Assembly (NCBI RefSeq): GCF_964204865.1
Contig: NC_135253.1
Coordinates: 15,748,001 to 15,812,000 of the forward strand
Length of the DNA stretch: 64,000 nucleotides
Source: Styela clava
Lineage: Eukaryota
Direction of reading: 5' to 3'
Below are positions 26,835 through 53,662 of the stretch, in pieces (the stretch's first letter is position 1; each line of letters starts with the position of its first letter). The notes under the pieces were generated by a model that was not told where the DNA came from, did not search any database, and worked only from the letters and a program-made list of their open reading frames with translations. The translations under genes were made by a program, and so were the position numbers.

Positions 26835-27209
<375 letters not shown>

Positions 27210-29474: not shown

Positions 29475-30898
29475 CTAATACAATTCAAAATTATCAAATC
29501 TGGTAGGTAATTTTGAAACATAGGGTTTGATTTGTGAAGTACTTGGAATATCGAGTACACCACGACAAACCAAAGATTCACGTCCAGTAAAAAAGGGTTT
29601 GAGTCTTATTAAAATGAATTCGAATACTAGGATGAAATTTTCTAATATTTTCATCAACGGGTACAATAGAACAAGAAAATGGACTTTCACACTCTTGAAT
29701 TACACCATTATCTAGCAATTCTTGTATTTGCCTTTTAATTTCACCTCTTCATCTCTTAAAGCATGTGGCTCATGCCTTGGAGGTAAACGAATCGGTCGCC
29801 CGACCGTTGGAATTTCATGTTCACATAAATTTGTTCTACCCAGATCCCATGGACTAGAAGACATGATATCTAAATTATGTTCAAGAAAAGTATACCATTC
29901 CTCCTTCTCCTCAGGAGTTAATTTCACATCATCGAAAGATACTTTCGAACGAAAATCTGAAAACTTTTCTTTTAAACTACTTATCTCAGGGGGATTCTTT
30001 TTCGTGCTCTCGGTCACGTTAATATTGCAACAAGAGTGACCCGCATCGTGTTCAACAAGAATCCAGTCATTGGGCGAAGCATTAAAAGCATCATCCGAAC
30101 CTACTACAGGTGTAAAATCACCAAGTAATTGATTTATATTTACTTTCAATGAGAACGGTCCTGGGGTCATAATACGAACCGGTATTTGGGCATCAATAAA
30201 ATAAGAAACAAAGTTTGAAACAAGAGCCGACTCTTTTTGCTGCAAGGGAAGTCTATCAACCAAAAATACGGGTCGGCACAATACCACTTGACTCATCAGA
30301 AGACACAGATTGCAAATTAGTCTCGATAATATTTGCAAATTAGTCTCGATAATATTATTGGTGCTTATATCTGTGTCATTATAATCATCACCCATCAGAC
30401 TTCTCATTACGACGACAGTTTCAGATGGTCGGATTACGACTTCATCTATCGACGACACTTTGTAAGTGCGTCTTGGATATGGGGTAGGTTCAGATGTAAA
30501 AAAAAAACGCAGCTATGCCCAATCTTAACCCTAACCCTAACAGTATCTTATCGACATTACCCCTAATGTCTCCTGTTACAAAAAACATGTGATAGTCGTC
30601 TATACTTCCAATACGAATACGTATTTTTGTTCTACCTTTAATATTAATAGGTTCTCCCCTATAACATTCAAATCTGTGTGACGGATTCTATGTCCTGATT
30701 TTTGCTAGCTTCTTTCCACAGAGTAGATGAAATGGAAGAGGCACCAGTACCACTATCTATGATAGTATTTGCATGCAAATTATCTCCGATCAAAATGTCG
30801 GTGTAAACGGGAGTACACAGTTCCCTGTGCTGGTTAGTAACATTGGAAAGGGTGTTCGAGACTTTCTTAGCATATTCTTCATATGCTTTAGTTGTCAA
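29475..30898 (-). pseudogene. Degenerate pol remnant (aspartic protease, RT N-terminus; RT core, RNase H and IN core deleted)
   Basis: IIDSGTGASSIS protease motif and DLGRTNLCEHEIPT...PIRLPPR; no YxDD or DDE region before the PPT. Confidence 0.8.
30454..30547. mobile_element. ~94-bp mini-element nested in the Gypsy pol region
   Basis: Flanked by (c/t)tatcgac duplication; contains aaccctaaccctaa like the other MITEs. Confidence 0.55.
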
Positions 30899-31094
30899 GG
30901 GCTTTTCAGTTTCATTTACAAATTACAAGCCGTTCATTTGATCCGGGATTTACCTTGGAATCTTTCTCGGGTTGGTGACTGGCCTCGTTCCTCAACCCTT
31001 CCGCGTTTAACACTGTGTTAACATCGGATTTGAACTGTTTATCATCCTTAATCTTTATATTCTTATATCTACGTAACACTTTCTGTAAAGCAAA

Positions 31095-32116
31095 ACAATT
31101 CTCATCTATGTGGTTAGTCTTTCAACAATAACTACAACCATCGCGATTTCGAGGTTCTTGTGTGCCGGAGAAACCTCCACGGCCAACCCGACCTCTGTTA
31201 CATGATCCACGGCCTCGGCGGTCATTTTGTTTACCGCCATAGTTTTGGCGTCTGGAATTGCCACTACCGCTATATCTTTGCTTTGAGCTCATCGCATTGA
31301 TTTGCGAGTTTTGTGAATCATTAGGATCCACATAATTATATGCAAACTGTTTCGCATTAGCAGCCCACTCCATTAGACATTTAACATAAACACGAAAAGA
31401 GGTATTCATAGGTCCAACCATATCTAAAAATTCTTTAGCTCTTTTATTTCTAAGGCCATACTTAAATTGTTGGCACAGTATATCTTCTGTAGTTGGTGTT
31501 TTACCATATGCCAAATAACCCAAATGTTCGAGATCCTGAGCATACGCATTATAGCTTTCGCCAACCTGTTGTATGAGATCTCTAAATTTCTGGTGGGGAC
31601 TAGTTTCACCAGCGGTACCAGAAAACTTTACCAAATATTGTAAAATAGCATCATAATTAAAACTGTCTTGGGCAGGAATAACCGTTTTCAAGCGGGTAAG
31701 AACATCAGCATCAATGAACCCATACAAGCAAATTGCTTTTGCAGGGTCATCCCTAGCTTCGGTATGAGATAGACTAGCATTAAACCGAAGTGCAAATTTA
31801 TTCGGTCATCCCCGTCATGAAAAACTTTGATACTACGGTTAAGGGTTTTTGTTGCTGAATGAGCAATTTGATAATCTTCCCGTGTAACATCAGGACGACG
31901 TCCCTCGACCCCCGGTACAAATTGTACATACGGTTGTTGAATAGGTTGTTGTTGGGGGGCGGGCTGTTCGGTCCCCTGGTAAAATGGATATTGCGGAGAA
32001 ACCATAGGAGGGTTACTAGGGAAATATGGAGCATAAATCTGACAATACATTTGATACGGAATATTCCCATAAAACATATTTGGTAGTTGACTACTAGGAT
32101 AAGCAACGCCAGCCAA
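31095..32116 (-). pseudogene. Degenerate gag with zinc knuckle
   Basis: QQVGESYNAYAQDLEHL and QFKYGLR (retrotransposon gag); RG-rich linker; CSYC*KTNHIDENC (CX2CX4HX4C with an internal stop); frameshifts near 31700-31800. Confidence 0.85.
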
Positions 32117-33805: not shown

Positions 33806-34738
33806 CTATAACAGTCTTGAATTATTATACGCCTACACATCCGTCAGCATATTAAAGCAAGACCAAATAGAGTTAGTCTCACGTTGTAACCCAAACTGAA
33901 ACCTTCGATGAAATCAATTATCAACATTATTGAAATTACGAACAAATGTTATTTATATTTATTTCTTTATATATATATACGTTTTCTTTCAGAAAAGTTT
34001 GTAATAGCTATTTGGTGGTTTTCATGTTTCTCAGATTTGTTATATACACATATTATTCATTTGTTTTGGTTACTCGTTTTTTATGTTTTATAAATAATAA
34101 TAATTAGAAGCATAGGCGTTAACTGAATTTTTTCATTAAGCTGAATCAGCATCGTAGGTGTCGCTGCTCGAAGACCTTTCGAGGCACCTCGCGACTCATG
34201 TACTTTTTTATTTATTTTATATATATCTTATTTTATTTTTTATTTTATCATTTTTTTACCTATTTATCTATTTATTTTATTTACTTCATATCTTACCATA
34301 TTTCCGTGATATATATATTTATATTGATTGTGTTGACGAAAAAATGATGATTGATCGATACGTTTACCGACTGACGCTCCCAACGGTATTAAAGTTACGG
34401 CGAAATACTATATAAACATTTAACGACTGACGCTTTTTAACAGTATTGAAGTTTCAGACAAATGCTATTTTTCTACGAAGTCTATTAAAAACAGTAGCCT
34501 ACTTCATATTGGCACAAACTCGAATAGCATTTTTTCATACACAGAAATTTCTTTTAAAATTATGATATAGAAAGATCTTGAGTAATTATCATACTAGAAC
34601 TCGATTATCAACTGTTCTTTATTTAGTTGTTTTGAAAAATCCATGAAAATTCTTTTTTTTTTTAACCACGATTCAGACTACCCACAACAGAAAGTAGTCC
34701 CAAACAATCGTGCAAAAATCCCAGGACAGACAGGACGC

Positions 34739-37700
34739 TCAAATGTAAATGTTCAGGTTTGCATGATCACACTTTTGACGGCACATGAAGCAAAACTTTC
34801 GGAGTCTCTTTCCTAAACAAACACCAAATTTAGACGTAGAGAATTTTAATTACATTTATTACAACTAATAGTGTTTGTGAGAGCGGACCATAGGCATGCT
34901 CATAATATATATTTATGTCGCCGATAGTTTATCTTTGTCGGGATTTTTTGCAGAATATGGCAGCTCAAAATGACACAAAGTTCATAAAGATAAACCTTTA
35001 TTAAGCTCGTTATTGAAGAATAGCTGAAAAACAATTAGTTATATACAACACAAATAATGCTCGAAGTTTGAATTTGATTTAACATTTATTATTTTGTTTA
35101 TTTTCATATGTAATATTTTAACTAGTGTTTGGTTTTTGTTGATGATTACGCTAATGTATTATAGTAACTATACCATACTTTTATTTCTTCGATGTATTTT
35201 CTGGGATTCTCCAACGCAATCTAACACGTGTTGACTGTGTTCCTCCTTTTTCTTTGCACAAAATTTGTAGCAATTTTCCGGCACTTTCACTGTTTTTGTT
35301 TGAACAATGTGTATTTCGGTGGTGTGGTGAATTTGATGTAGAATCTGTAATGGCAATGAGAGATTGACGTTGCAATCCAATTTGTATGCGCTGAAATACT
35401 GAAACAATTTTTTGTAAATGATTTTCCTTCTAACAAAACTATTAAATGTTGTTTTCCCAGTGAGGAAAAGCATCTAAAATTTTGGTTTTTACTACAAATA
35501 TACAGTGCAGCATATTTGGAGTGAAGTTGGATCGTTGCAAACCAGATTGTTGCAATTTATTTATTTCCCTGGGTCAACGTTCCCAATCGGAGAGCGTAAT
35601 ACCAGCTACGAAGCTATTCTACGCAAGATTGAACAAATACCGGAATCAGAGTTTTTATGTAGAGTGGGGAAGAAATAAAGAGTTCCAAAATAGGCAATGA
35701 TGAAATTTATTGAGAAAAGTTAGGGACCGGGTGAAGCATAGAACACACAATAGTAACGTATGAACGTCTGCTCCGAACCCACACAGTCATGTAGCTGCCA
35801 ATTGGCGTCGTCGGGGATAGCCAAGTGTGACGTTGATAAAATCTTCTTAATCAAGTGAGGTTTTAATCACGCCAACACCCGTCAGTACCGGTGCCTCAAT
35901 GGAAGCGTGCATGTTTGTTAAGCATAAGGCCAGGTGCAAGGTTGGGTTCAAATCCCAGAGAGTTGAGGTGCAGAGAGCTAGCTAGAGATCAAGGCATTCG
36001 CAGACTGGAGTTGAGAAAGGCATGAGGAGGGAGGGAGACGAACGGAGTCGGGAGTGGCACCGACGGACCGCTGGAATAATAGGGAACAAAAGGATCAGGC
36101 TAAAACGCGGCTAGGAAAAGAACGGGCCGGAAGGAGACAGAGCGGAACAGACAGACAAGAAAAGGTTTAGAGAAGGAAAGCCACAGACGGAATAGCGGGT
36201 GCGGCAAGAGGCAGGCCGGGCTTAAAGGGGAAAATGCCGATACTGATACCTAAACTGGTCAAAAAAATGTTGAGAATTGGGGACCAGTATCAGAGTCAGA
36301 AGAAACACGATGGTCAAAAGCATGGTCAAAAAATAAGCGAAGAAGTCTGAATGCAGCGTTGTTTCTTTTAGCGCCAGATGGTGATGGATTTAAATTATTT
36401 TTTTCCTGAGGTTGAATCTTTCACCCAATTTAATTTTTTTTTATTTCTTGAGCGCCAGACGGATGGGTGTTTTAATCAAATACGAGAGAGAAATGGAAAG
36501 AAGAACCTGCATACAAAGAGGAGATAAATTATGAAAAGAAGCGAGGAGGAAGTCTTGATGCAGCGTTGTTTGGTTTAGCGCCAGATGGAGATGGATGGAT
36601 GGATTTAAATTTTTTATTTCTCGAGCGCCAGGCAGATGGGTGTTTCAACCAATTCAGCGGGTTCATGAAAATGTGAAAGTAATTTTGAAACTTATATCCT
36701 GATAAAGTGCGAGCAGGTGCTTTAAAATTCAGAATGAAATTCAGGTCTTTTGGATAAGATTTAAAAAAGAAAATTTATTATTAGTGTAAAATTGATGTGC
36801 AAAATGATAATTTTGTTCATCGAGAAGACATATTCAATTGATTTTAAAAATGCTGTTTCCAAATAGCTCCTCCTGTTCTCTTAAAACACCCAACATTTCT
36901 GCCATAATACCAATCCCCGGAGAGATGTCCAAAACACACCATATGTAGGGTGCTCCTAAAGTATGCGCACCAAGATGTCGCATAACCTGAACCCTAACCG
37001 GGTACACAACCTGAGTTCAGGTTGTGCGCCATCTTGGTGCGCATACTTCAGGAGGTCCGTAGTATTGTATACGGGGCTTTTCTTGCGTTGGTTACCCTTT
37101 CTATCTTTTGAAAAGCACTTGATTGCCACCGGGTATATTCATGTTATGCATACTCCCGTAGTATGTGAATCAATATGGCGGACACCGGGACGTAGTATGT
37201 GTACCAGGTTAGGGTTAGGCCATAATTTCGAATGTTCCTAATTTTAGTTCTATTACAAGTTCGAGGACTAGCCAAGTGACTCCAGTAGTATTTGTACCTG
37301 AAATTATGGCCTAACCCTAACCTGGTACATATACTACGTTTCGGTGTCCGGCATCTTAGTTCACATACTACGGGAGTATCAAACAATATTCCAACGTTTC
37401 CAATTTCGTAAACTGCCAAGTCACAATAAAGATATAGGCTAGCAATTATAGTAAAAAGAGTGGCAGGCTATACGCGCATAGATTGTTTCAACTTTAAAGC
37501 CATGTTTACCCGCCAAGAAGAAATTCTTCCGCTGGTGAAAATTTTGTCATTCTTTGGGAGGGATTTTACCTTGTATTTACTGTAGTACTACTGATATTCG
37601 GCTGGGTTCCACTGGCCTAAGTTGTTTGAAGTATTTTAGTAAATGATTAAAGACGATAAATATGAATATTCAAACAAATATATCATGAGAAATTGACACA

Positions 37701-38197
37701 CCACATGATCCAAAATCATTTGTAACAGTCCGTCGTCTTCATAGTCATATTCTTCTTGGCTAGGTATTGCAACAGAGATGTCCATTACTAAAAACCAGAA
37801 AATGCTTCAAGTTAATATCTCATATTTGACTAATTATTTTATTGTTTTGAGTTTTTGGGAGTTCAGTAATATTGCAGTAGTTGTGCAATATAAAATTTCT
37901 ACAACGTTGGGTGAATAAACGTTTTCACATGCGATTAACACACAATAATACGTATTCGGCACATAAGATTTTTGGTCTTTTTCATATGTATATATATATA
38001 CTACTCAAATTAAGTGGTGGCAGTCGAAATTTTATTTATCATATTTATAAATGTATTTTGTTAGCATAACAATATAACTAACAATAGGACCTATTAGACG
38101 AAAATTTGCATTTCGAAAACGTATTATATTGAAAGAAATTGTAGTGCATACCTAACACGAAAAGCAACAAGTCAAAAACGTGTCTCGATGGCAGCAT
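34739..38197 (-). CDS. Small secreted His-rich/6-Cys protein A (123 aa; exons 38197-38152, 37787-37702, 35344-35179, 34812-34739)
   Basis: Spliced product MLPSRHVFDLLLFVLVMDISVAIPSQEEYDYEDDGLLQMILDHVILHQIHHTTEIHIVQTKTVKVPENCYKFCAKKKEEHSQHVLDCVGESQKIHRRNKRKRLRKFCFMCRQKCDHANLNIYI*; exon sizes and phases match paralogue B. Confidence 0.85.
35690..36240 (-). repeat. GC-rich repeat-element remnant in intron 2 of gene A (family unresolved)
   Basis: Abrupt rise in GC and strong purine bias on +; AATAAA on - at ~35706; no recognisable ORF. Confidence 0.35.
36341..36650. repeat. Degenerate direct repeat pair
   Basis: gaagtc..tgcagcgttgttt..tttagcgccagatgg..gatttaaatt..gagcgccag..gatgggtgttt at ~36341-36475 and ~36550-36647. 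Confidence 0.7.
36949..37058. mobile_element. Second copy of the 110-bp MITE
   Basis: Near-identical to 11775-11884. Confidence 0.85.
37150..37380. mobile_element. ~230-bp palindromic MITE with a TTAGGG-containing arm
   Basis: Arm tactcccgtagtatgtga..gtaccaggttagggttaggccataattt and its inverse; other copies at 52081 and 20820. Confidence 0.85.
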
Positions 38198-38845
38198 TAT
38201 TCTTTTCGTTTCCAGCAGCTAATTTCCCAAAGTCACTTTGAATATTTTTAAAATAGAAAGTTATTCACAGTATTTTTAGATATTTATCTTTTATCTAATG
38301 ATAAATCCTTTAATTTACTTATGACATATCATGTCGTGTTTGAGACCTGGTATATATGTTATCACAGTAATAAGTTTTCATATAAATTGACGTCATTGGA
38401 TGACGGTAGATGTTGTTCAAGTCTCTATTTTAAATTTTATAGAGAGGTAATATACATAACGAGGCAGACGTTCGGCATACATAGTGGCCGGCAATTTGAT
38501 TCGGAGATTCTGAACGTTTCAAATTACAAATGAGTCAAAATAGTTAATCTACGCTAATCTACTCGCAAACGTACTCATGATTCTGTAACTAACTATGTGG
38601 AGTTCATAAGTCGAGGTTTTTTCGTGCAACCCTGGAAAAGTATTTTTGCAGAGAAAACCCCCAAAAAGTTCTCATATTGTGGGATGACAAATACACTCAA
38701 TATCCCTTTTTGATTAGAATCAGAATTATTACATGAAGTGGAATTCAAGTCAAAACCGATGTTTCGCGAAAAAAAACAATTAAACTCGTGCAGAATACCA
38801 CAATTTGCCAACTTTTCTCATTGTTACAAAATCGGAAGCCCCCTC

Positions 38846-39310
38846 TATATATAGATACAAAACCTCCAACTTGATTCTACCTTGTAATATGCAAAGTAAC
38901 TCTCTACGACAACAAATACACTATAAACTAAAGAATAATACAATGTGGCATAAAAAATTTGTCTGAAATTCTCCACTTTAAAACTCTTCAAATACGCAAG
39001 GCAAAGCTGTCAGACGATGCAAAAGTGGACTCTAATATTCACTATTTGTAAATAATGCTCAACATGAGGCATTAAAAAAGTAACTATGTACCATTTTCGT
39101 GAGTTAGTTATCTAGCATTTTACAGCGGACATGACTCCTAAACTCGTAATCTCAATATTGCTTGTATACAATAGTTTATCTTTTTAGGATGCTGACGGAG
39201 GGATCCGCTTTCTGTTGGTTAAAGCGATCTCGTTTCATGAGTAACTTCATAAATTGACTGTGAGTAATAAATTTACAATGAAAGGAAGAAACCGTCGAGG
39301 AAGTTGAATC
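38846..39310 (-). promoter_or_regulatory. Putative promoter/enhancer of secreted gene A
   Basis: TATA-like tatatataga followed by GGGG, plus blocks shared with 43371-43676. Confidence 0.55.
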
Positions 39311-39620
39311 TACCGCCGTACGGGTGTAATTTGACCATTTTTCAAAATTTGTAACTTGATTTAAACTATAAATCATGCATAAAAATTAGGTACGAATCTT
39401 ACGCAATGTTTCGCTCATTTTTTTCAACGAATGATTGACAAATAACAATATTTTGAAAGCGAACAACACATAGTCTGTAAGTTCCCTCTGAATTTTAGGT
39501 TTAAAAATTTCCAAAAAGTGCCTGAAAGCGCATACCACTGTTTAGAAAAAGCATAATATATATCCATAAATGGTACATAGCTATCTCATAGGAACATAAC
39601 TTTCTTATGTTTTAGAAAGG

Positions 39621-40032
39621 TTATCTCTTTTTTTCCAGAGGATAGTTGTTTGAAAAACAGACATTGAGTAATACTGGTATAAGAATCGTTTTTAGTAGGG
39701 TGAAGCCTTCTTGAGGGACGGGGTGACACATCATTGTATTTGTATGTAGACCACAGTGATGCTGAATGCTTGTACCAGTATGACCTGGGTTGTATCGTTT
39801 CCTATCTTTTTTGCACGCTATATTTGCAAACAATATCCTGATACTTGCATATTTTGATTTATTTTGTGTGTTGCACATCCTAGCGTGGTAGGAACGTTCT
39901 CTATCCCATAAACATAATTGGACTCTGCCGGCACTACTACGTTTTTTTTTCTTGTTTCGTGCGTCTGTGCCAGATTTAAAGCAAGAACAGATAGTAAAAG
40001 ACGCAATCCAAAATAATATTTCGAATTTTCAT
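39621..40032 (-). pseudogene. Intronless secreted Cys-rich ORF (~136 aa) with a +1 frameshift immediately after the ATG
   Basis: The start reads ATG-AAA-A-TTC. Removing one A gives MKFEILFWIASFTICSCFKSGTDARNKKKKRSSAGRVQLCLW...CHPV...VCFSNNYPLEKKR*; that frame is open from ~40028 to 39621. Confidence 0.5.
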
Positions 40033-40484
40033 GATTTGCCTGTCATTTTTGAGAATCTTACTTATCTTTGTTAATTTGTAATGCACCACAACTTAGTTTT
40101 CGTAGGTTCCGTCGTGTTTATAAAAACTCAGGCATCAGTATATCCGTGATAATATGCACAAAAGCTTGACAATTCTTCGCCTTCCATGAAATTGAAATAT
40201 ATTTAAAAGGAATCTAATATAATTACATATTTCCTCTCACTTGTTGAACGTACTAGTCAAATATTTACGTCCAATTGCCCCATTTACTGCAAGTTTACAT
40301 ATAGATGTAAAACGTAAGCACCGCACAATGTTTCGAAACTTTAATATATATTTTCCAATCACATAAATTCCATATTCATAAGATCAAGAGTATAATCTCA
40401 AAATTGACAACTTGATTAGGATATATTCTTTTCTTTGTTTTATTGAAATTCATGCAACTTTCACGTCTACTTGAAATACGATGC

Positions 40485-43013
40485 TTAAATGTAGATGGAC
40501 AGATTCGCTTTAATGCATTTTACACGGCACTTGAAGCAAAATGCTCGTACTTTCTCTCCTGAAAAAAATACAATTTTATGTAACGTCGACCACCTCATTT
40601 CAAAACAAGTTTGTGAAGTCAATAATACTGCTTGGAGCATATCTATATGGTTCTAATGTGTGATCATGTCTGATATTTTGTTCAACTTAGCGAGTCCTAA
40701 ATAGAACACTCACTCATACATTATACATTACATACATTATTTGAATACGTTGGAAATTATTTATAAATGATATATTAAGTTCTTGTATTTTAATTTCAAA
40801 ATTTTTTGAATTACAAAGGTATCGAAATGGCCGTGATCCAGACATAATTTTTTTTGTTCCAATGTCGTATGAATGCTCGCGTCTTCACATTCAAAAGCGG
40901 AAAAATTGATGTGACTGAGGCTACGTCACCTCCTCTGTAGTCTTGACGAGCTAATCTATGTGCTCACGTTTTCACGAGTCTGTGACGAACAATTGACTGC
41001 CAGGTGTGGGCTATATGGGTCGAGAATGGACAATGAACTCGCGCAAACTTGGAAATGTCAAGACAAGCTGTACTACTAGCAGCCATCTTTCAACTCACTG
41101 CAATTATTGGGCTAACAATTCGGATGATATTTGATTACTTTTATTTACCCTATTGTAGAATAGCGCCAACAATATCGGTGACCTCCATCGTTTCAGTGCA
41201 CATTTCAGTTTCAGGACTCTGGTCAAATTTCAAATATCTCAGTTTTGTTTGTTCAGAATAACTAAAAATTTCATTATTCTGAATAAATATTTTCACATTT
41301 TCTGGAGACACAGGACGGAAAGAAATGCAGTTTTGGACATTTATACCGCAAGATCTCATTGCAAGTCCCAGATAATCCGATCAATGCACGTTTGCATTGC
41401 TTACGTTGTTTTGACTACATCGTATACAGTGCTTTAATTTCTGATTGCCCTATGCTATATTTTACGAAATGGGAAACCATTTTATTACCACACATAAAAC
41501 GAGCTCGGGTAACGACAATAGACATTAAAGCTTTATATAAAAAATACCAATTATACTTGAATAGTTGTTGAGCATGTATCAGCTACTACAACAGTTCCCT
41601 CTGTTTCTATATATTTTCTATGGGGTAAAATTCATAAAAATCCAAATTTTACTTTAAGCCAATACAAATTTAGCTATTATTCATAAAAATATTTTAGCTA
41701 CTTTCGCTATACGTTATAGGAAGAACGATTTGTGACGTTGATCCATATTGAAATTGTGTTAATTTCAATGTCAAGTTTCTAGAATATTCACTGGATGTTT
41801 CACCGACTATTTTTCCTTTTTTTCGTAGATTTACTCAATTTTATTTACATATATTTTAAGTGAATGTATTTTTGTGTTGTGATTTTACAAGTGTAGTTAC
41901 TAGTTACTAATCTTACTTTTTATGCATTGCACAAACATTGTAATTTTATCAAGATTGGTTGTGTCAATTAAATTTCATGAACTTGCATTTAAACATACTT
42001 TTCTTATCTTCCTTCATTTTGAGAGATTCTTCTATGCAATCAAAAGCGTATTCTTCCTTATTTTCCTTTTTCTTTGCACAAAATTTGTAACATTTCTTTG
42101 GAACTTCAGCCGTTTTTGTATGAACCATCGTAACTTGAGTGTGAAGCGTTTGGTGCAGTATCTGTGAAAATAAGAAGAACGAAATTAAAACCAAATATAA
42201 TATATTTACACAATAGAGAGGAAGAATAAAATATAGAGAAAAAAGAAAGCATAAAGTAAACATACCACGTGGTCTAGAAGCATTTGTAACAGGTCGTCGT
42301 TTTCATCTACATAATCCTCGTCATCATGCATCGCAACAGCCACGCCTGATACTAAAAATAATCAAAGTTTCAAGGTAAGTTCGGATTGCGTTTTGGGGAT
42401 TGTAAAACTAGACTTCGATGGCTTTACCCCAGAAGAAAAATTTTAAAAAGCTGTTTTCTAGAAAATGTGGAACGCGTATGCTTTGAAATCTAAACTAAAA
42501 TTTTCATCAAAATATTTGATTAATATTGCTACAAACTATGATTAAACACCAGCTTAAAAAGCATCTATTTCTTTGTAATTTTTTCAAATAACGATGTTTT
42601 CGAATTCCAACATTGGCCCTTTTGTCTCGAAACCACTTCTCGTACCTTTTTAAATTGAATAACCCTTTTTGTTTCATTTGCAATTCAGAAGAAACAAAAG
42701 AAATTCTCATTATTCATAATATTTTCACAATATATGCTGTATAAGCATAAAGGCAAGCTGGCGATTGATCATTACTCACTTATTATACATCATCAACATA
42801 TTATCGCCTTGTCAAATGTCAAAATATTTCAGTTCAGTTGTGTGAAACAAAATAACAGAATTTGCTAAAAATCCCGAATTGAACAATCGAATGGGTTCCA
42901 GGTGTTTTCACGTAAATTATTATACTTTCGAAAAGTATTCCACACGAAAGATAAAACAAAATCGTACCTAGTAGAAATAACCATAGACCAAGACTCCATC
43001 TCAGTGAAAACAT
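40485..43013 (-). CDS. Small secreted His-rich/6-Cys protein B (122 aa; exons 43013-42968, 42351-42266, 42161-41999, 40558-40485)
   Basis: Spliced product MFSLRWSLGLWLFLLVSGVAVAMHDDEDYVDENDDLLQMLLDHVILHQTLHTQVTMVHTKTAEVPKKCYKFCAKKKENKEEYAFDCIEESLKMKEDKKREKVRAFCFKCRVKCIKANLSIYI*. Confidence 0.85.
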
Positions 43014-43370: not shown

Positions 43371-43676
43371 CTTATATACACGGAAACTCAATGAAGTCAA
43401 GCGATTCTACCTTCAGCTATAGTGCCTAAAATTTGATATCAGGATAATAGACCTACACGTTTCTTTAAGAATTAATTGCATAGTCAATCCGCTACGGACA
43501 TGACTCCAACGCGCTGTAGTATCAATTTTGCAGGTATACAATGGTTTATCTTCTCAGGGAGCAGACGGTTGGATCCGCTGTCACATGAATACAATAATCT
43601 TGATTCATGAGTAACTTCACAAACAAGCTTTTGTATTTCTTTAACAAAGGAAGGAAGAAACCGGCGAGGAAGTTGA
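43371..43676 (-). promoter_or_regulatory. Putative promoter/enhancer of secreted gene B
   Basis: TATATAAG followed by GGGG; shared blocks gattctacctt, cggacatgactcc, ttcatgagtaacttca and aggaagaaaccgNcgaggaagttga. Confidence 0.55.
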
Positions 43677-49144: not shown

Positions 49145-52080
49145 TTTGTTTACCTAACTATGTTACCCTAAAGACAAAAGCAAATAACTGAATGAAGACT
49201 ATTACTGAAAAACCGACCTTAAATCACAGTACCACACTCTCAAAATGTAACCATTTGTACAAACGATTTCGCACTCTATCTGCGCGAGTGAGAATTCATG
49301 TTCCAAACTGCGATAACGTTCCGAAGTGCGATACTCAAACTAAGGATGGATATTTTTTCCTTGCAGCCTGTCGTGCGTAAGTAATTTACGTGTCTGCTAA
49401 TTGAGAAATGTATTGGTATGATGACGTCAATTTCTTGTTAATTTAATGAAACTAGACGGCATTCTCGCGCCACTAATGTCTTCTGAGTTTAGCCGCCGAC
49501 GTTAGGTCGAGTGGTACGAAAAACAGCTGTCACTATATTTATTCGCCTGTTCGCAGCCATCGTCTTATCAAGCTGGTTACGACACTAACATAAATTGCCA
49601 ATTCCAAATGAAGGAACATCACAGGATCAACATATGCTGCATAAAGTTTTATATACCATCCTTCGAGTTATACTTATTAAGTTATTTCTTCAGAATTTAA
49701 TGAATATATATATTTATTTAATTTGTGAAGATTTCACAATTATTCTATTGTTCATTTATTATTTATTGTACCTAGTTAAAATTATGATGAAAGGTTCGTA
49801 ATAGAATCTTCTTCTGTTATGAAGATTTGACTCGGTGTATCCATCTAAGTAAAACATTCATTGCTGTTAAATTTGAGTGGTATATTATACCAAATTTTAA
49901 ACTACAACATAGCACTAATAGATTTTATGCACAATGATATCATACCTTTTCGTATTATAACTGCTTTATATAAATAAAATATTATTTTGGTAGATTTTCT
50001 CAAATGGAAAAAATTTTCAAGCCAAAACACTTTTCAAAAACACATTGACAGTGGTAATTATAATTATTTAGAGTCGAGAATTAATAGAAAACGAGTTTTG
50101 AAAATTGATCGGCCATAAATCACAAAGCAACGGACAAAAAACGCTGGCAATGAAAAGTATGCGCAGATCGAAAAAACATGGAATATGGAGATCGTTGAAC
50201 CTTCTTGGTGGCGATAGAGGACCATGTATATTAAAAAAACTAACAACAAAAGTCAATCAATACTTTGGTTCAAAACCAATTTCCATTGGTAATACTTTAG
50301 TTCGTACGTAAATGATTTGTTTTGTCAAATTAATATATCACTAGCAATTTTGAGTTTTTTATCGGCCAATAGACTTTGACTATATTCTGATTGGTTGCAA
50401 AATACAGGTTGTAAGTTTTTAAAATCACAAAGCAATGATTCAAAATTTGAGTGAGGTAGTCTGAAAGCATATGGTTGAACTAACGCCATACTTTTTTCGA
50501 CTTAAATGTATAAATGATATCTTCTACAAAATTATGATCTCGACTACGAATAGTCCGTCGTCGCTCCTATATCACTCATTTAACTTGCTGGACGAGGCAA
50601 AATATTGTCTATTAATTCATAGTCCTCTTGCACTATGTTTTTAAATCATTTTATCTGAAAAAGATTGTGGTGCTCAAGCTATTAAATGCATTTCTCCCAA
50701 ATAGGCTCACTCGCTCTGTCCCTCTTTGCATAAAGCCAGGCACACAGTGGTTGATGCTAAACTTATATTGATTACCTTAATAAATGTGGTTCGAACCCTC
50801 GATATTTAGTCTGCGAAACAAAATTGTAACGCAAGTAAGTTTGGTAAGCGGTACAAAGTTATGCATCGCAAATATAAAACTGAACCCTGAAATAGAAATT
50901 TACGTTATGTAGTATCAGTATTATCTTGCATCGCGCTACGCATATATATACCTTTTACTACTTTGATCCCCAAAAATAAATTAGCGAAATTGTTTTCAGT
51001 ACATTTAGCTATAATGTACTAAATCTTTTGATTCTCATAACTTCTAGCTTCAGATAACCGAGAGACCTAATTTGGAGTTGCTTAATGATACAAACCATTA
51101 AATGGTATATCATTATACGAAAAATTGCAAATTTTCTTCAAAATTCCTTATAAATCTACGCTTGCACCTTATACTATAGTCAAATATCTCTCAAGTCCTG
51201 ATAACAAAGAAACTAAATTTCTTTTGAAGCAAGCAAACCATGAACATGTTTTATTTGGGGCAAACGGAAAATGATATTCAAATCAGCCACGATTCTTTGT
51301 CATGCTGCGTCACTAGGCATGTTCGACTATAAAGTGACGCATCTTTTAAAATTTCTGTCAAATTGCTTTGTAAACCATGCTTAACAAGACTTGGCCTGTA
51401 ACATAGTCAATTCCACACTGAAAAAAAAAACTAATTCTCCCAAACTTATGCTGTCTAATAATAAATATTGAGCGCAGCAGCACGGGACTTGTGGGTCGAA
51501 GAGTTTTGACTGAGTGGCCTAATTAGGTATACGACATAACATTCTAGAGATCCCAGATAAGTTGGTGTATTGGTAATTAAGACCATCTCTGGATTAAAGA
51601 TTCCTCACCCACTAAGTTACCGGACGGGAAAAAATGTCGCATAACTGTGTTTTGAGCCATAAAGATCTTGTAAATGTACCTTGTGTCTGCTACAATGTTT
51701 ATATATTACGTAGATGCAGTTAAATTTTGAGGCCATATATTAACATACGTGCATAACCTCTCTGTACAGAGATTTGTTTGTAAAGAGGGCAACCAGTCTT
51801 CATTTGAAGTCAGCATGGTTGCATTTGTATTTACGACCACAAAAATTATATTGAATTCCTGAATATATAAAATATTTGAAACCCTTAAGATGATAGTATT
51901 ACCTGATGCATGGGTCCTCGATTGTGTTGGATAACTGACAATCGTGCTGTTCATGATAGCCTAGTCTAGGGGGCTATGGCATTTCATGTCAGAGCCCAAG
52001 TGACAATACTGTGCTTGTCTTATTACCAGACCAAACTAACTGATGAAATGATATACGTCTCATTGAAACGCATTGGGTTT

Positions 52081-52314
52081 GGTACTTCCGTAGTATGTGA
52101 ACCAAGATGGCGGACACCGGAACGTAGTATGTGTACCAGGTTAGGGTTCGGCCATAATTTCAGGTACAAATACTACGGGAGTCACTTGGCTAGTCCCCGA
52201 ACTCGTAAAAGAACTAAAATAAGGAAAATTAGAAAAACATTATGGCCTAACCCTAACCTGTTACACATATTACGTTCCGATGCCCGCCATCTTGGTTCGC
52301 ATACTACAGGAGTA
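52081..52314. mobile_element. Copy of the ~230-bp MITE
   Basis: Matches 37150-37380; flanked by tgggttt on both sides. Confidence 0.85.
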
Positions 52315-53662
52315 TGGGTTTATTTTTATTGTTCCTTATTATCTCAATGTTGATTTTTTAACATAGTATTATGTCAATAAATGGAATTTTGTCTAAATGT
52401 CTCCCATTTACATGGCTAAGCCTTCTTTGTTTGGCGATGATGAATAAGCTTGTGGCCTGAAGTAAATTCACGTTCAGCTTTCGGATAAGGCGGTGTTCTG
52501 CTGTACAACAATTTTCAATCAATGTAACAAAAGCCCGAAAACAGTAAATTATTGGATTGCTATTGAACTACAAATAAGAATTTTCTTTTTATATTAAAGA
52601 GGGCTAGCAGCGTTGTCGAGTTTTATCGCAGCCGTTATCCGTTTTGGTATATAAGCATAACCCGACAGCGCCTAAAATATTTTAACTAATAATTGAGATT
52701 TGAATGTGTGGTTTAACCGTAAATATATACTACTAACTAACAACTTAACTCAATCAGAAAAAACGCATAAGAAAGTTCAAGAAATACGAATAAAAAACAC
52801 TTTTTTGCAATGGCAATCAATGTGTTCATTGTAACATTTACCGACTTTATTGGTCAGTGATTATGTGAGTTTCTAGATTTAGGATGTAATCAGTGTCAAA
52901 AATTGAAATGCGCATATATAATTCAGATGGATTATTCACTTTGGTTCATTTTTATGATAATTAATGATTATTTATTATTTTTAAAATTGATTTTAGCATA
53001 TAGGTGAGAAGAATACTTCAAATATCGTTTCGATCGACAACACGACGCCATCAATGTACTATAGTGATCTATAATCCAATAAACAATTTCTATGTATTCT
53101 GATTTGTGTTGCAAATTAGAAAGATGTTTTCAATTCTTGTATGTATACTAAGGCGTATGATTCTTAGTAATAATCAATGAATATTATGAAAATTCGTTCC
53201 TGAGGGAGGTATAGATTGATCAGTTTCAGTGCTAAATAAATAACATCTTCAGTCAATCGCAAACCTTTTTGTATTGTAAGATATGAGTTTTCGTTCGGAG
53301 ACTGAGCAAAGTACTGTTTGTTAACAGGCTCAGTAATGTCGTATCGTGTACATTGGTTAATATTCTAATTTCGTAAAATTGCCAAAACAATCATACGAAT
53401 TTAATTATAGTGTTTGTAATATGATGTTAAAAATTGTCTATAGAGTAAGTTTGAGTCTATCACAACGATGTGCGTGATATTTTACATTATATGTCTTCAC
53501 ATAGAAATTTCAGTATTTAACGATTGTGGAAAAATGCAGTAATTTAAACATTTATTTTGAGTTTTTGGCCAAACAACCTGATACTGATTATGTACAAATC
53601 TAACATTTTTGGCATGACCGTAGTCTTTTTATTTCTCCTAAGATCTAGTCTAGAATCTAGAT

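What the first reader, a model, noticed from the sequence alone, without database searches (positions are those of the whole stretch)
34739..43013. Hidden tandem pair of secreted acidic/His-rich/6-Cys precursor genes
Seen: two four-exon genes that the ORF track misses, with matching exon sizes (46/86/166 or 163/74 nt) and intron phases (1,0,1). Both encode a signal peptide, an Asp/Glu-rich segment, a His-rich LLQMxLDHVILHQ segment, and a Lys-rich domain CYKFC-x13-C-x19-CFxCRxKC ending ANLxIYI. All six Cys are conserved while the introns have diverged, which implies purifying selection. I recognise no family. Hypotheses (inference): (a) a host-defence propeptide, since acidic propieces and His-rich segments recall ascidian clavanin-type precursors and the basic clusters KKK and RKR/KKR are convertase-like; (b) a metal-binding protein, since the Lys-rich CxxCRxKC resembles the C-x2-4-C repeats of ascidian vanabins.
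Basis: partly seen in the sequence, partly recalled or inferred. Interest (0 to 1): 0.85.

Follow-up and report, generated by a model that had tools for sequence, protein, structure and literature searches.

The report
Orphan sea-squirt secreted six-cysteine protein pair

Summary
Two minus-strand genes, A at 34739-38197 and B at 40485-43013, each have four coding exons of 46/86/166/74 nt (A) and 46/86/163/74 nt (B). All introns are GT-AG, with phases 1,0,1.

They are not hidden. Their spliced translations are identical to the Styela clava RefSeq proteins XP_039249435.1 (LOC120327104) and XP_039249437.2 (LOC120327105), both named "uncharacterized protein".

- **Relatives:** the genome holds only these two copies. 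Searches of 1.84 and 5.8 billion proteins found one further relative, an unnamed 121-aa protein on a 1-kb Logan contig that is not in this genome.
- **No known family:** Pfam, PDB sequences, ESM Atlas and fold searches gave nothing. AlphaFold2 confidence is low (pLDDT about 50), with an all-helical prediction.
- **Selection:** A and B are 52% identical, with dN/dS about 0.29 and dS about 1.2.
- **Added here:** an invariant Tyr in an acidic, sulfation-like context; an invariant His ladder (i, i+4, i+8); and a basic six-Cys C-domain (pI 9.3-9.8). A 183-nt non-coding block plus a TATA region upstream of both genes is better conserved than the exons.

The vanabin and clavanin resemblances fail the membership tests. 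Function remains inferred: a cationic extracellular effector is my first guess and a signalling ligand the second. The scan earlier found a different orphan secreted-peptide array in this genome (s1-819786), not this family.

The parts
38152..38197 (-). Gene A (LOC120327104) coding exon 1, 46 nt: ATG plus most of the signal peptide; donor GTATGC
   Evidence: translation equals P0007
37702..37787 (-). Gene A exon 2, 86 nt: end of the signal peptide, acidic Tyr segment, LLQMILDHV. The tandem donor GTG|GT accounts for RefSeq isoform X2, which lacks Val44
35179..35344 (-). Gene A exon 3, 166 nt: His ladder, CYKFC, KKK, third Cys, basic cluster
34739..34812 (-). Gene A exon 4, 74 nt including the TGA stop: CFMCRQKC ... 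NIYI
34618..34623 (-). AATAAA about 115 nt after the gene A stop; candidate polyadenylation signal (inferred)
38846..38883 (-). Gene A candidate core promoter: AAGGTAGAATC motif (38873-38883) and TATATATAGAGGGGG (from 38853 downwards), shared with gene B
39126..39307 (-). Gene A copy of the conserved 183-nt non-coding upstream block (75% identical to the B copy). It contains a conserved GAGGAAGT (ETS-like) word on the + strand, AGATAA, and TTACTCATGAA
42968..43013 (-). Gene B (LOC120327105) coding exon 1, 46 nt: ATG plus the signal peptide; donor GTACGA
   Evidence: translation equals P0003
42266..42351 (-). Gene B exon 2, 86 nt. The tandem acceptor (TATCAG) and tandem donor (GTG|GT) account for RefSeq isoforms X2-X4
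41999..42161 (-). Gene B exon 3, 163 nt; donor GTATGT
40485..40558 (-). Gene B exon 4, 74 nt including the TAA stop: CFKCRVKC ... SIYI
40439..40444 (-). AATAAA about 40 nt after the gene B stop; candidate polyadenylation signal (inferred)
43373..43413 (-). Gene B candidate core promoter: AAGGTAGAATC (43403-43413) and TATATAAGGGGG
43495..43676 (-). Gene B copy of the conserved 183-nt non-coding upstream block

Best explanation
These are two intact, tandemly duplicated genes of Styela clava, RefSeq LOC120327104 and LOC120327105. They belong to a taxonomically restricted (orphan) family of about 122-aa secretory proteins.

Shown:
- Four GT-AG coding exons in each gene.
- Purifying selection between the two copies.
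- Three family members only.
- No detectable known domain.
- A conserved upstream block and TATA region at both loci.

Inferred mechanism:
1. The N-terminal 22 residues act as a signal peptide, cleaved after the small residues VA/SG.
2. The roughly 100-aa product is secreted whole rather than cut into small peptides.
3. The product has an acidic tail with an invariant Tyr in a DEDY-type context, likely O-sulfated in the trans-Golgi.
4. Next comes an amphipathic helix carrying an invariant D-H-x3-H-x3-H ladder.
5. The C-terminal Lys-rich helical domain is locked by three disulfides. From the spacing these are probably nested: C1-C6, C2-C5, C3-C4.

My best functional guess, at about 35-40%, is a cationic extracellular effector. 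It would bind anionic targets such as microbial surfaces or sulfated glycans. The acidic tail and His ladder would act as a charge-, pH- or metal-sensitive mask or switch. Reality of the genes and secretion: about 0.9.
For: - **Gene models and identity to RefSeq proteins:**
- **Two copies only in the genome:**
- **Third relative:** P0008 has all six Cys and the helix motif conserved. It reads uninterrupted across all three exon junctions on a 1036-nt contig, so it looks like mRNA, and it is not in this genome.
- **Selection:** dN/dS is 0.29 overall and 0.17 in the acidic/His part; dS is about 1.2.
- **Charge layout in all three members:** the acidic tail carries -6 to -8, and the C-domain carries +8 to +14 with pI 9.3-9.8. 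His sits at i, i+4, i+8.
- **Invariant columns:**
- **Predicted structure:** all-helical in two AF2 runs.
- **Shared regulation:** a 183-nt block 75% identical and unique to these two loci, plus a shared AAGGTAGAATC/TATA region.
Against: - No expression, tissue or peptide data could be obtained.
- AF2 confidence is low (pLDDT 52 and 49), so the fold and the disulfide map are inference only.
- The signal peptide is the least conserved part and the core is conserved. The family has two old copies rather than an expanding, fast-evolving array. Both points are unlike many antimicrobial peptide families and fit a ligand with a fixed partner at least as well.
- Signal cleavage and sulfation were judged by eye against textbook rules, not by a predictor.
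Confidence: 0.5

Rival explanations
1. A signalling ligand (hormone, cytokine or pheromone-like) that acts through a conserved receptor. The conserved His-ladder helix and the disulfide-locked domain would form the binding surface.
For: Purifying selection is strongest on the helix: 13 of 17 residues are invariant and dN/dS is 0.17. The copy number is low and stable. The signal peptide has diverged while the core is conserved. Promoter elements are conserved in both copies.
Against: No similarity to any known ligand family was found. No receptor or expression information is available. The extreme charge segregation is not typical of helical hormones.
Confidence: 0.25
2. A metal-binding or metal-buffering secreted protein. 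The D-H-x3-H-x3-H ladder would bind Zn, Cu or Ni. In the first reader's version, the Lys-rich Cys domain would bind vanadium as vanabins do.
For: His at i, i+4, i+8 with a preceding Asp is invariant in all three members. His-X3-His on a helix is a classical metal site (established knowledge).
Against: This is not a vanabin: it has 6 Cys against 18, and no sequence match. One three-His site is a low capacity for a buffer. In a secreted protein the Cys residues are probably tied up in disulfides.
Confidence: 0.12
3. A prohormone or AMP-type precursor cut at the basic clusters (KKK; KR/KK before the fourth Cys). Cutting would give smaller peptides or a two-chain disulfide-linked product. The acidic/His part would be a discarded propiece.
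For: KKK is invariant, and a K/R cluster precedes Cys4 in all members. The anionic part roughly balances the cationic part, as in defensin-type propieces.
Against: No conserved basic site separates the acidic/His part from the Cys domain: A has VPEN where B has VPKK. The basic clusters lie between conserved Cys. The supposed propiece is the best-conserved segment.
Confidence: 0.1
4. Non-functional or chance ORF mosaic, or pseudogenes.
Against: Both copies have complete open frames and canonical splice sites. dN/dS is 0.29 at a saturated dS, and six Cys are invariant. There is a third member from other DNA, and RefSeq models with isoforms exist.
Confidence: 0.03

Closest known systems
Anionic-propiece / cationic cysteine-rich host-defence precursors (alpha-defensin-type organisation; in ascidians, the signal + anionic piece + cationic peptide layout of clavanin and styelin precursors)
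   Same: A signal peptide is followed by an acidic segment whose charge roughly offsets a cationic part. The basic domain has six Cys, and His-rich helical sequence occurs in a Styela clava secretory protein.
   Different: No sequence or Pfam relationship was found. The Cys spacing C-x3-C-x13-C-x19-C-x2-C-x3-C and the predicted all-helical structure are unlike defensins. Clavanins and styelins are linear, Cys-free and amidated. No conserved cleavage site lies between the parts, and the acidic/His part is the most conserved.
Vanabins (ascidian vanadium-binding proteins)
   Same: Ascidian, Lys-rich, helical, with closely spaced Cys pairs.
   Different: Vanabins have 18 conserved Cys forming nine disulfides and a bow-shaped fold, and the classical ones act in the cytoplasm. 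This family has six Cys and a signal peptide, and a family profile matched no PDB chain.
Cystine-stabilised helical mini-proteins (Cx3C helical hairpins; nested-disulfide helical bundles such as saposin-like folds)
   Same: C-x3-C sits on one predicted helix and C-x2-C-x3-C on another, which would allow helix-to-helix disulfides with a nested pattern.
   Different: This is analogy from Cys spacing only. There was no Pfam, PDB or fold match: Foldseek gave nothing at E<=0.001, and VIA gave Z<5 to generic helices. Domain length and spacing differ from saposins.
Other orphan secreted-peptide gene arrays of Styela clava (earlier scan note s1-819786)
   Same: Small multi-exon secretory genes, in tandem, lineage-restricted, and uncharacterised in RefSeq.
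   Different: That is a different family: three exons, an RRK(R/G) site, an acidic tail and seven copies. I did not check that note myself.

Membership tests
Vanabin | 18 conserved cysteines forming nine disulfide bonds in the core domain (PMC9486056) | tested here: not met
   Six Cys in each mature protein; vanabin features read
Vanabin | Detectable sequence similarity to a solved vanabin | tested here: not met
   A profile of the family against all PDB chain sequences gave 0 matches at E<=10. I assumed, but did not verify, that a vanabin chain is in that copy of the PDB.
Clavanin-type precursor | Yields a 23-aa linear, Cys-free, His/Phe-rich, C-terminally amidated peptide (PMC10608444) | tested here: not met
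   The His-rich helix has no Gly plus basic amidation or cleavage signal on either side, and it is joined to a six-Cys domain
Clavanin-type precursor | Sequence homology of the prepro region to clavanin or styelin cDNAs | not tested
   No reference sequence was available by id. The searches of 1.84 and 5.8 billion proteins returned only the family itself.
Any curated protein domain family (Pfam-A), including defensins, ShK, saposin, Kazal and Kunitz | Score above the family's gathering cut-off | tested here: not met
   The best hits were DUF4354 at 12.8 bits (cut-off 25.5) and Evasin class A at 10.5 bits (cut-off 27)
Classical secretory protein | N-terminal signal peptide: basic n-region, 10-15-residue hydrophobic core, small residues at -1 and -3 | tested here: met
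   By inspection only. R5 is invariant, the hydrophobic run spans about residues 10-21, and VA|, VA| and SG| sit at the aligned cleavage position in A, B and P0008. No SignalP-type predictor was available.
Tyrosine O-sulfation substrate | Tyr in a secretory protein with several acidic and no basic residues or Cys within about +/-5 | tested here: met
   Invariant Y29 has 5-7 Asp/Glu within +/-5 in all three members. This is a consensus match only; the modification itself cannot be tested here.
Expressed, spliced gene | Transcript evidence for the three introns | tested here: inconclusive
Indirect evidence: RefSeq models with isoforms that use tandem splice sites present in the DNA, and an uninterrupted homologue on a 1-kb contig.

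The most novel reading that the evidence does not exclude
A previously undescribed class of styelid-ascidian extracellular protein. In it a sulfotyrosine acidic tail and a His-ladder helix would act as a pH- or Zn/Cu-operated switch, unmasking a disulfide-locked, Lys-rich helical domain. That would make a new structural type of host-defence or matrix-binding effector, or a new chordate ligand family, with a fold unrelated to known six-Cys families.
Probability: 0.2. Interest if true: 0.55.

Novelty: new variant of a known kind. Interest (0 to 1): 0.3.

Why it matters
If the proteins prove to be hemocyte or tunic effectors, they would add a cysteine-stabilised helical type to the Styela clava defence repertoire. 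That repertoire is so far known for linear peptides (clavanins, styelins). They would also offer a compact natural example of a His-ladder switch. If they are ligands, they would be a lineage-specific signalling system in the sister group of vertebrates. As it stands, this is one more well-formed orphan gene pair in a tunicate genome and is already present in RefSeq. The practical gains are a clean annotation, a third family member, conserved regulatory DNA suitable for reporter assays, and concrete residues to test.

Tried and rejected
**Searches that found nothing**
- Pfam on each member: only sub-threshold noise.
- PDB sequence search with one protein and with the profile: nothing.
- ESM Atlas on the whole and the mature protein: no usable hit.
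- AlphaFold2 twice, with shallow alignments of 4 and 6 rows: pLDDT 52 and 49.
- Foldseek against PDB: no match at E<=0.001.
- VIA wide: best Z 4.8 to talin and other generic helices, below the tool's own noise level for helical models.
- Paper searches for the LOC and XP identifiers: 0 papers. Searches for Styela clava cysteine-rich or secreted proteins: nothing relevant.

**Readings considered and rejected**
- The upstream conserved block as a dispersed repeat. Rejected: the genome has only these two copies.
- The block as coding. Rejected: the ORFs over it use different frames in the two copies.
- The block as a structured RNA. Rejected: fold z-score +0.2 and no Rfam hit.
- A possible third paralogue at C3:4361445-4361573 (CYKHC-x13-CIEE). 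Its genome-wide E is 0.66. Within +/-8 kb no exon-2-like piece was found, and the only exon-4-like score was noise (5 bits, E 0.97, opposite strand). I treat it as chance or a relic.

**Tools unavailable**

**Handling of the spliced model**
- Exons were searched by window reference.
- Full-length searches used the database proteins P0003 and P0007, which equal the spliced translations.
- Exons were joined only inside local scripts, to check frames and compute dN/dS.
Full report
**What is there**

The region lies in AT-rich (about 34% G+C) intron-bearing DNA without N. Reading the minus strand gives two gene models, each with four coding exons and canonical GT-AG borders.

| | Exon 1 | Exon 2 | Exon 3 | Exon 4 | Introns (nt) |
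|---|---|---|---|---|---|
| Gene A | 38152-38197 | 37702-37787 | 35179-35344 | 34739-34812 | 364 / 2357 / 366 |
| Gene B | 42968-43013 | 42266-42351 | 41999-42161 | 40485-40558 | 616 / 104 / 1440 |

Exon sizes are 46/86/166/74 nt in A and 46/86/163/74 nt in B, and intron phases are 1,0,1 in both. A 166-nt exon in B would need a non-GT donor.

An AATAAA lies 115 nt (A) and 40 nt (B) after the stop codons.

**Not hidden**

I searched exon 3 by window reference, inside its surrounding open frame. This returned Styela clava RefSeq proteins of 122-123 aa.

The spliced translations are identical to P0007 (XP_039249435.1, LOC120327104 isoform X1) and P0003 (XP_039249437.2, LOC120327105 isoform X1). 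Both are named "uncharacterized protein".

The further RefSeq isoforms are explained by tandem splice sites visible in the DNA:
- A GTG|GT donor at the end of exon 2 in both genes gives forms with or without Val44.
- A TATCAG acceptor in B gives forms with or without Val-Ser.

By established practice such isoform models rest on transcript alignments, but I could not see the reads myself. An older RefSeq version of B (P0001) differs at three residues: H24Y, V111Q and N117K.

**Family size**

Exon-wise and profile searches of the whole 377-Mb assembly find only these two loci.

HMMER against 1.84 billion cluster representatives found two relatives. One is gene A. The other is P0008, a 121-aa unnamed protein seen once, on a 1036-nt Logan contig.

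A profile search of 5.8 billion proteins added nothing. P0008 is not encoded in this genome: its best match there is 48% identical, to the two known loci. It therefore comes from other DNA, presumably a related ascidian. Its frame runs uninterrupted across all three exon junctions, so that contig looks like mRNA.

**Selection**

A and B are 52% identical in protein. Nei-Gojobori dN/dS is 0.29 overall, with dS about 1.2, that is, saturated. By segment:

| Segment | dN/dS |
|---|---|
| Signal | 0.34 |
| Acidic/His part | 0.17 |
| Cys domain | 0.39 |

Between the loci only exons 2, 3 and 4 and one upstream block align; the introns do not. This is an old duplication with both copies kept under constraint.

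**Protein anatomy**

1. **Residues 1-22:** a basic residue (R5), a hydrophobic run, then small residues at the aligned position. By inspection this is a signal peptide. It is the least conserved part (6 of 22 invariant).
2. **Residues 23-35:** charge -6 to -8, with an invariant Tyr that has 5-7 Asp/Glu within +/-5. This is the textbook context for tyrosine O-sulfation (inference).
3. **Residues 36-52:** LLQM-L-DH-ILHQ--HT, with 13 of 17 residues invariant. His sits at i, i+4 and i+8, preceded by an invariant Asp. Both AF2 runs predict a helix here.
4. **Residues 65-122:** pI 9.3-9.8, with 15-19 Lys+Arg. The pattern is C-x3-C-x13-C-x19-C-x2-C-x3-C with an invariant AKKK after Cys2. The predicted structure is helical, and the protein ends IY(I/M).

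The spacing of Cys1/2 (i, i+4) and Cys5/6 (i, i+4) would suit two antiparallel helices bridged C1-C6 and C2-C5, with C3-C4 closing the loop. This disulfide map is inference only.

**Regulatory DNA (new here)**

The best-conserved stretch between the two loci is not an exon. It is a 183-nt block at 39126-39307 (A) and 43495-43676 (B), 75% identical at 116 bits. Exon 3 scores 72 bits.

- The block occurs nowhere else in the genome.
- It is read in different frames by the local ORFs.
- It does not fold better than shuffles (z = +0.2) and has no Rfam match.
- Downstream of it both loci share AAGGTAGAATC followed by a TATA box and a G run, at 38846-38883 and 43373-43413.

I read this as a shared promoter and enhancer (inference). 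It would place transcription starts about 0.3 kb (B) and 0.6 kb (A) upstream of the ATG.

Conserved words include GAGGAAGT (ETS-like), AGATAA (GATA-like) and TTACTCATGAA. These are consensus matches, not evidence of binding.

**What it is not**

No Pfam family reaches its cut-off. No PDB sequence matches. The ESM Atlas gives nothing. The low-confidence models find only generic helices.

Vanabins are defined by 18 conserved Cys and nine disulfides (PMC9486056); this family has six. Clavanins are 23-aa linear amidated peptides (PMC10608444); here the His-rich helix is unflanked by processing signals and is the most conserved segment. Both resemblances are analogies at most.

**How it most likely works**

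Shown: real paralogous genes, constraint on the protein, a secretory-type N-terminus, conserved Cys, His and Tyr positions, and conserved upstream DNA.

Inferred: secretion of an intact protein of about 11.5-12 kDa, Tyr sulfation, three disulfides, and a helical fold.

My functional ranking is:

| Reading | Odds |
|---|---|
| Cationic extracellular effector that binds anionic surfaces or sulfated glycans, with the acidic tail and His ladder as a charge-, pH- or metal-sensitive mask | about 35-40% |
| Ligand with a conserved receptor | about 25% |
| Metal-binding protein using the His ladder | about 12% |
| Precursor cut at the basic clusters | about 10% |

The conserved core, diverged signal peptide and low, stable copy number argue against a typical fast-evolving antimicrobial family. 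That is why the first option is not rated higher.

**Limits**

No reads were laid, so expression is unverified here.
- The joined spliced sequence was never typed into a search tool. Exon references and the identical database proteins were used instead. Exons were joined only in local scripts.

**Verdict**

The finding is an orphan secreted six-Cys protein pair that is already catalogued but uncharacterised. It has some testable features: the His ladder, the sulfotyrosine motif and the conserved promoter block. Interest is modest.

Noticed in passing
window 36339-37379 (inside intron 2 of gene A); also 51976-52353: The 2.36-kb intron holds a roughly 207-nt tandem duplication (36339-36389/36546-36596 and 36437-36479/36610-36652). 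It also holds two hairpin elements: arms 36946-36992/37015-37061, and 80-nt arms 37150-37229/37300-37379 that are 91% complementary. The first hairpin gives a sub-threshold mir-559 Rfam hit on both strands (44 bits against a cut-off of 95), typical of MITE-like palindromes. An ORF over the second hairpin resembles one at 51976-52353, so the element looks dispersed.
   Followed up: partly
G000:C3:4361445-4361573 (locus L005): An isolated open frame with CYKHC-x13-CIEE, the same Cys spacing and flanking residues as exon 3 of the family. Genome-wide E is 0.66. Within +/-8 kb no exon-2-like piece was found, and the only exon-4-like score was noise (5 bits, E 0.97, opposite strand). It is chance or a relic.
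   Followed up: yes
window 26838-27188 (-): An intronless 117-aa ORF with a Skp1_POZ domain (E 5e-10). By eye it looks like Elongin C.
   Followed up: partly
window 29712-32116 (-): Three long ORFs in a locally G+C-richer stretch (0.40). One has a Gly/Arg-rich tail ending in a C-x2-C-like knuckle, suggesting a retroelement gag-like remnant. Pfam found nothing at E<=0.01 for the two ORFs tested.
   Followed up: partly
window 38388-38395: A perfect CRE palindrome TGACGTCA lies about 190 nt upstream of the gene A start codon, inside the putative 5' intron or UTR. It is absent from gene B.
   Followed up: no
protein P0001 versus P0003 (gene B): The two RefSeq versions of gene B differ at three residues (H24Y, V111Q, N117K). 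Two of these lie in the last 12 residues of the Cys domain. The older version's CRQKC matches gene A and its KAK matches P0008. This could be allelic variation or exon-4 gene conversion.
   Followed up: no
window 37785-37787 and 42349-42351: Both paralogues keep a tandem donor (GTG|GT) at the end of exon 2. RefSeq lists forms with and without Val44 for both genes. Removing Val44 changes the His ladder spacing from i, i+4, i+8 to i, i+3, i+7.
   Followed up: partly
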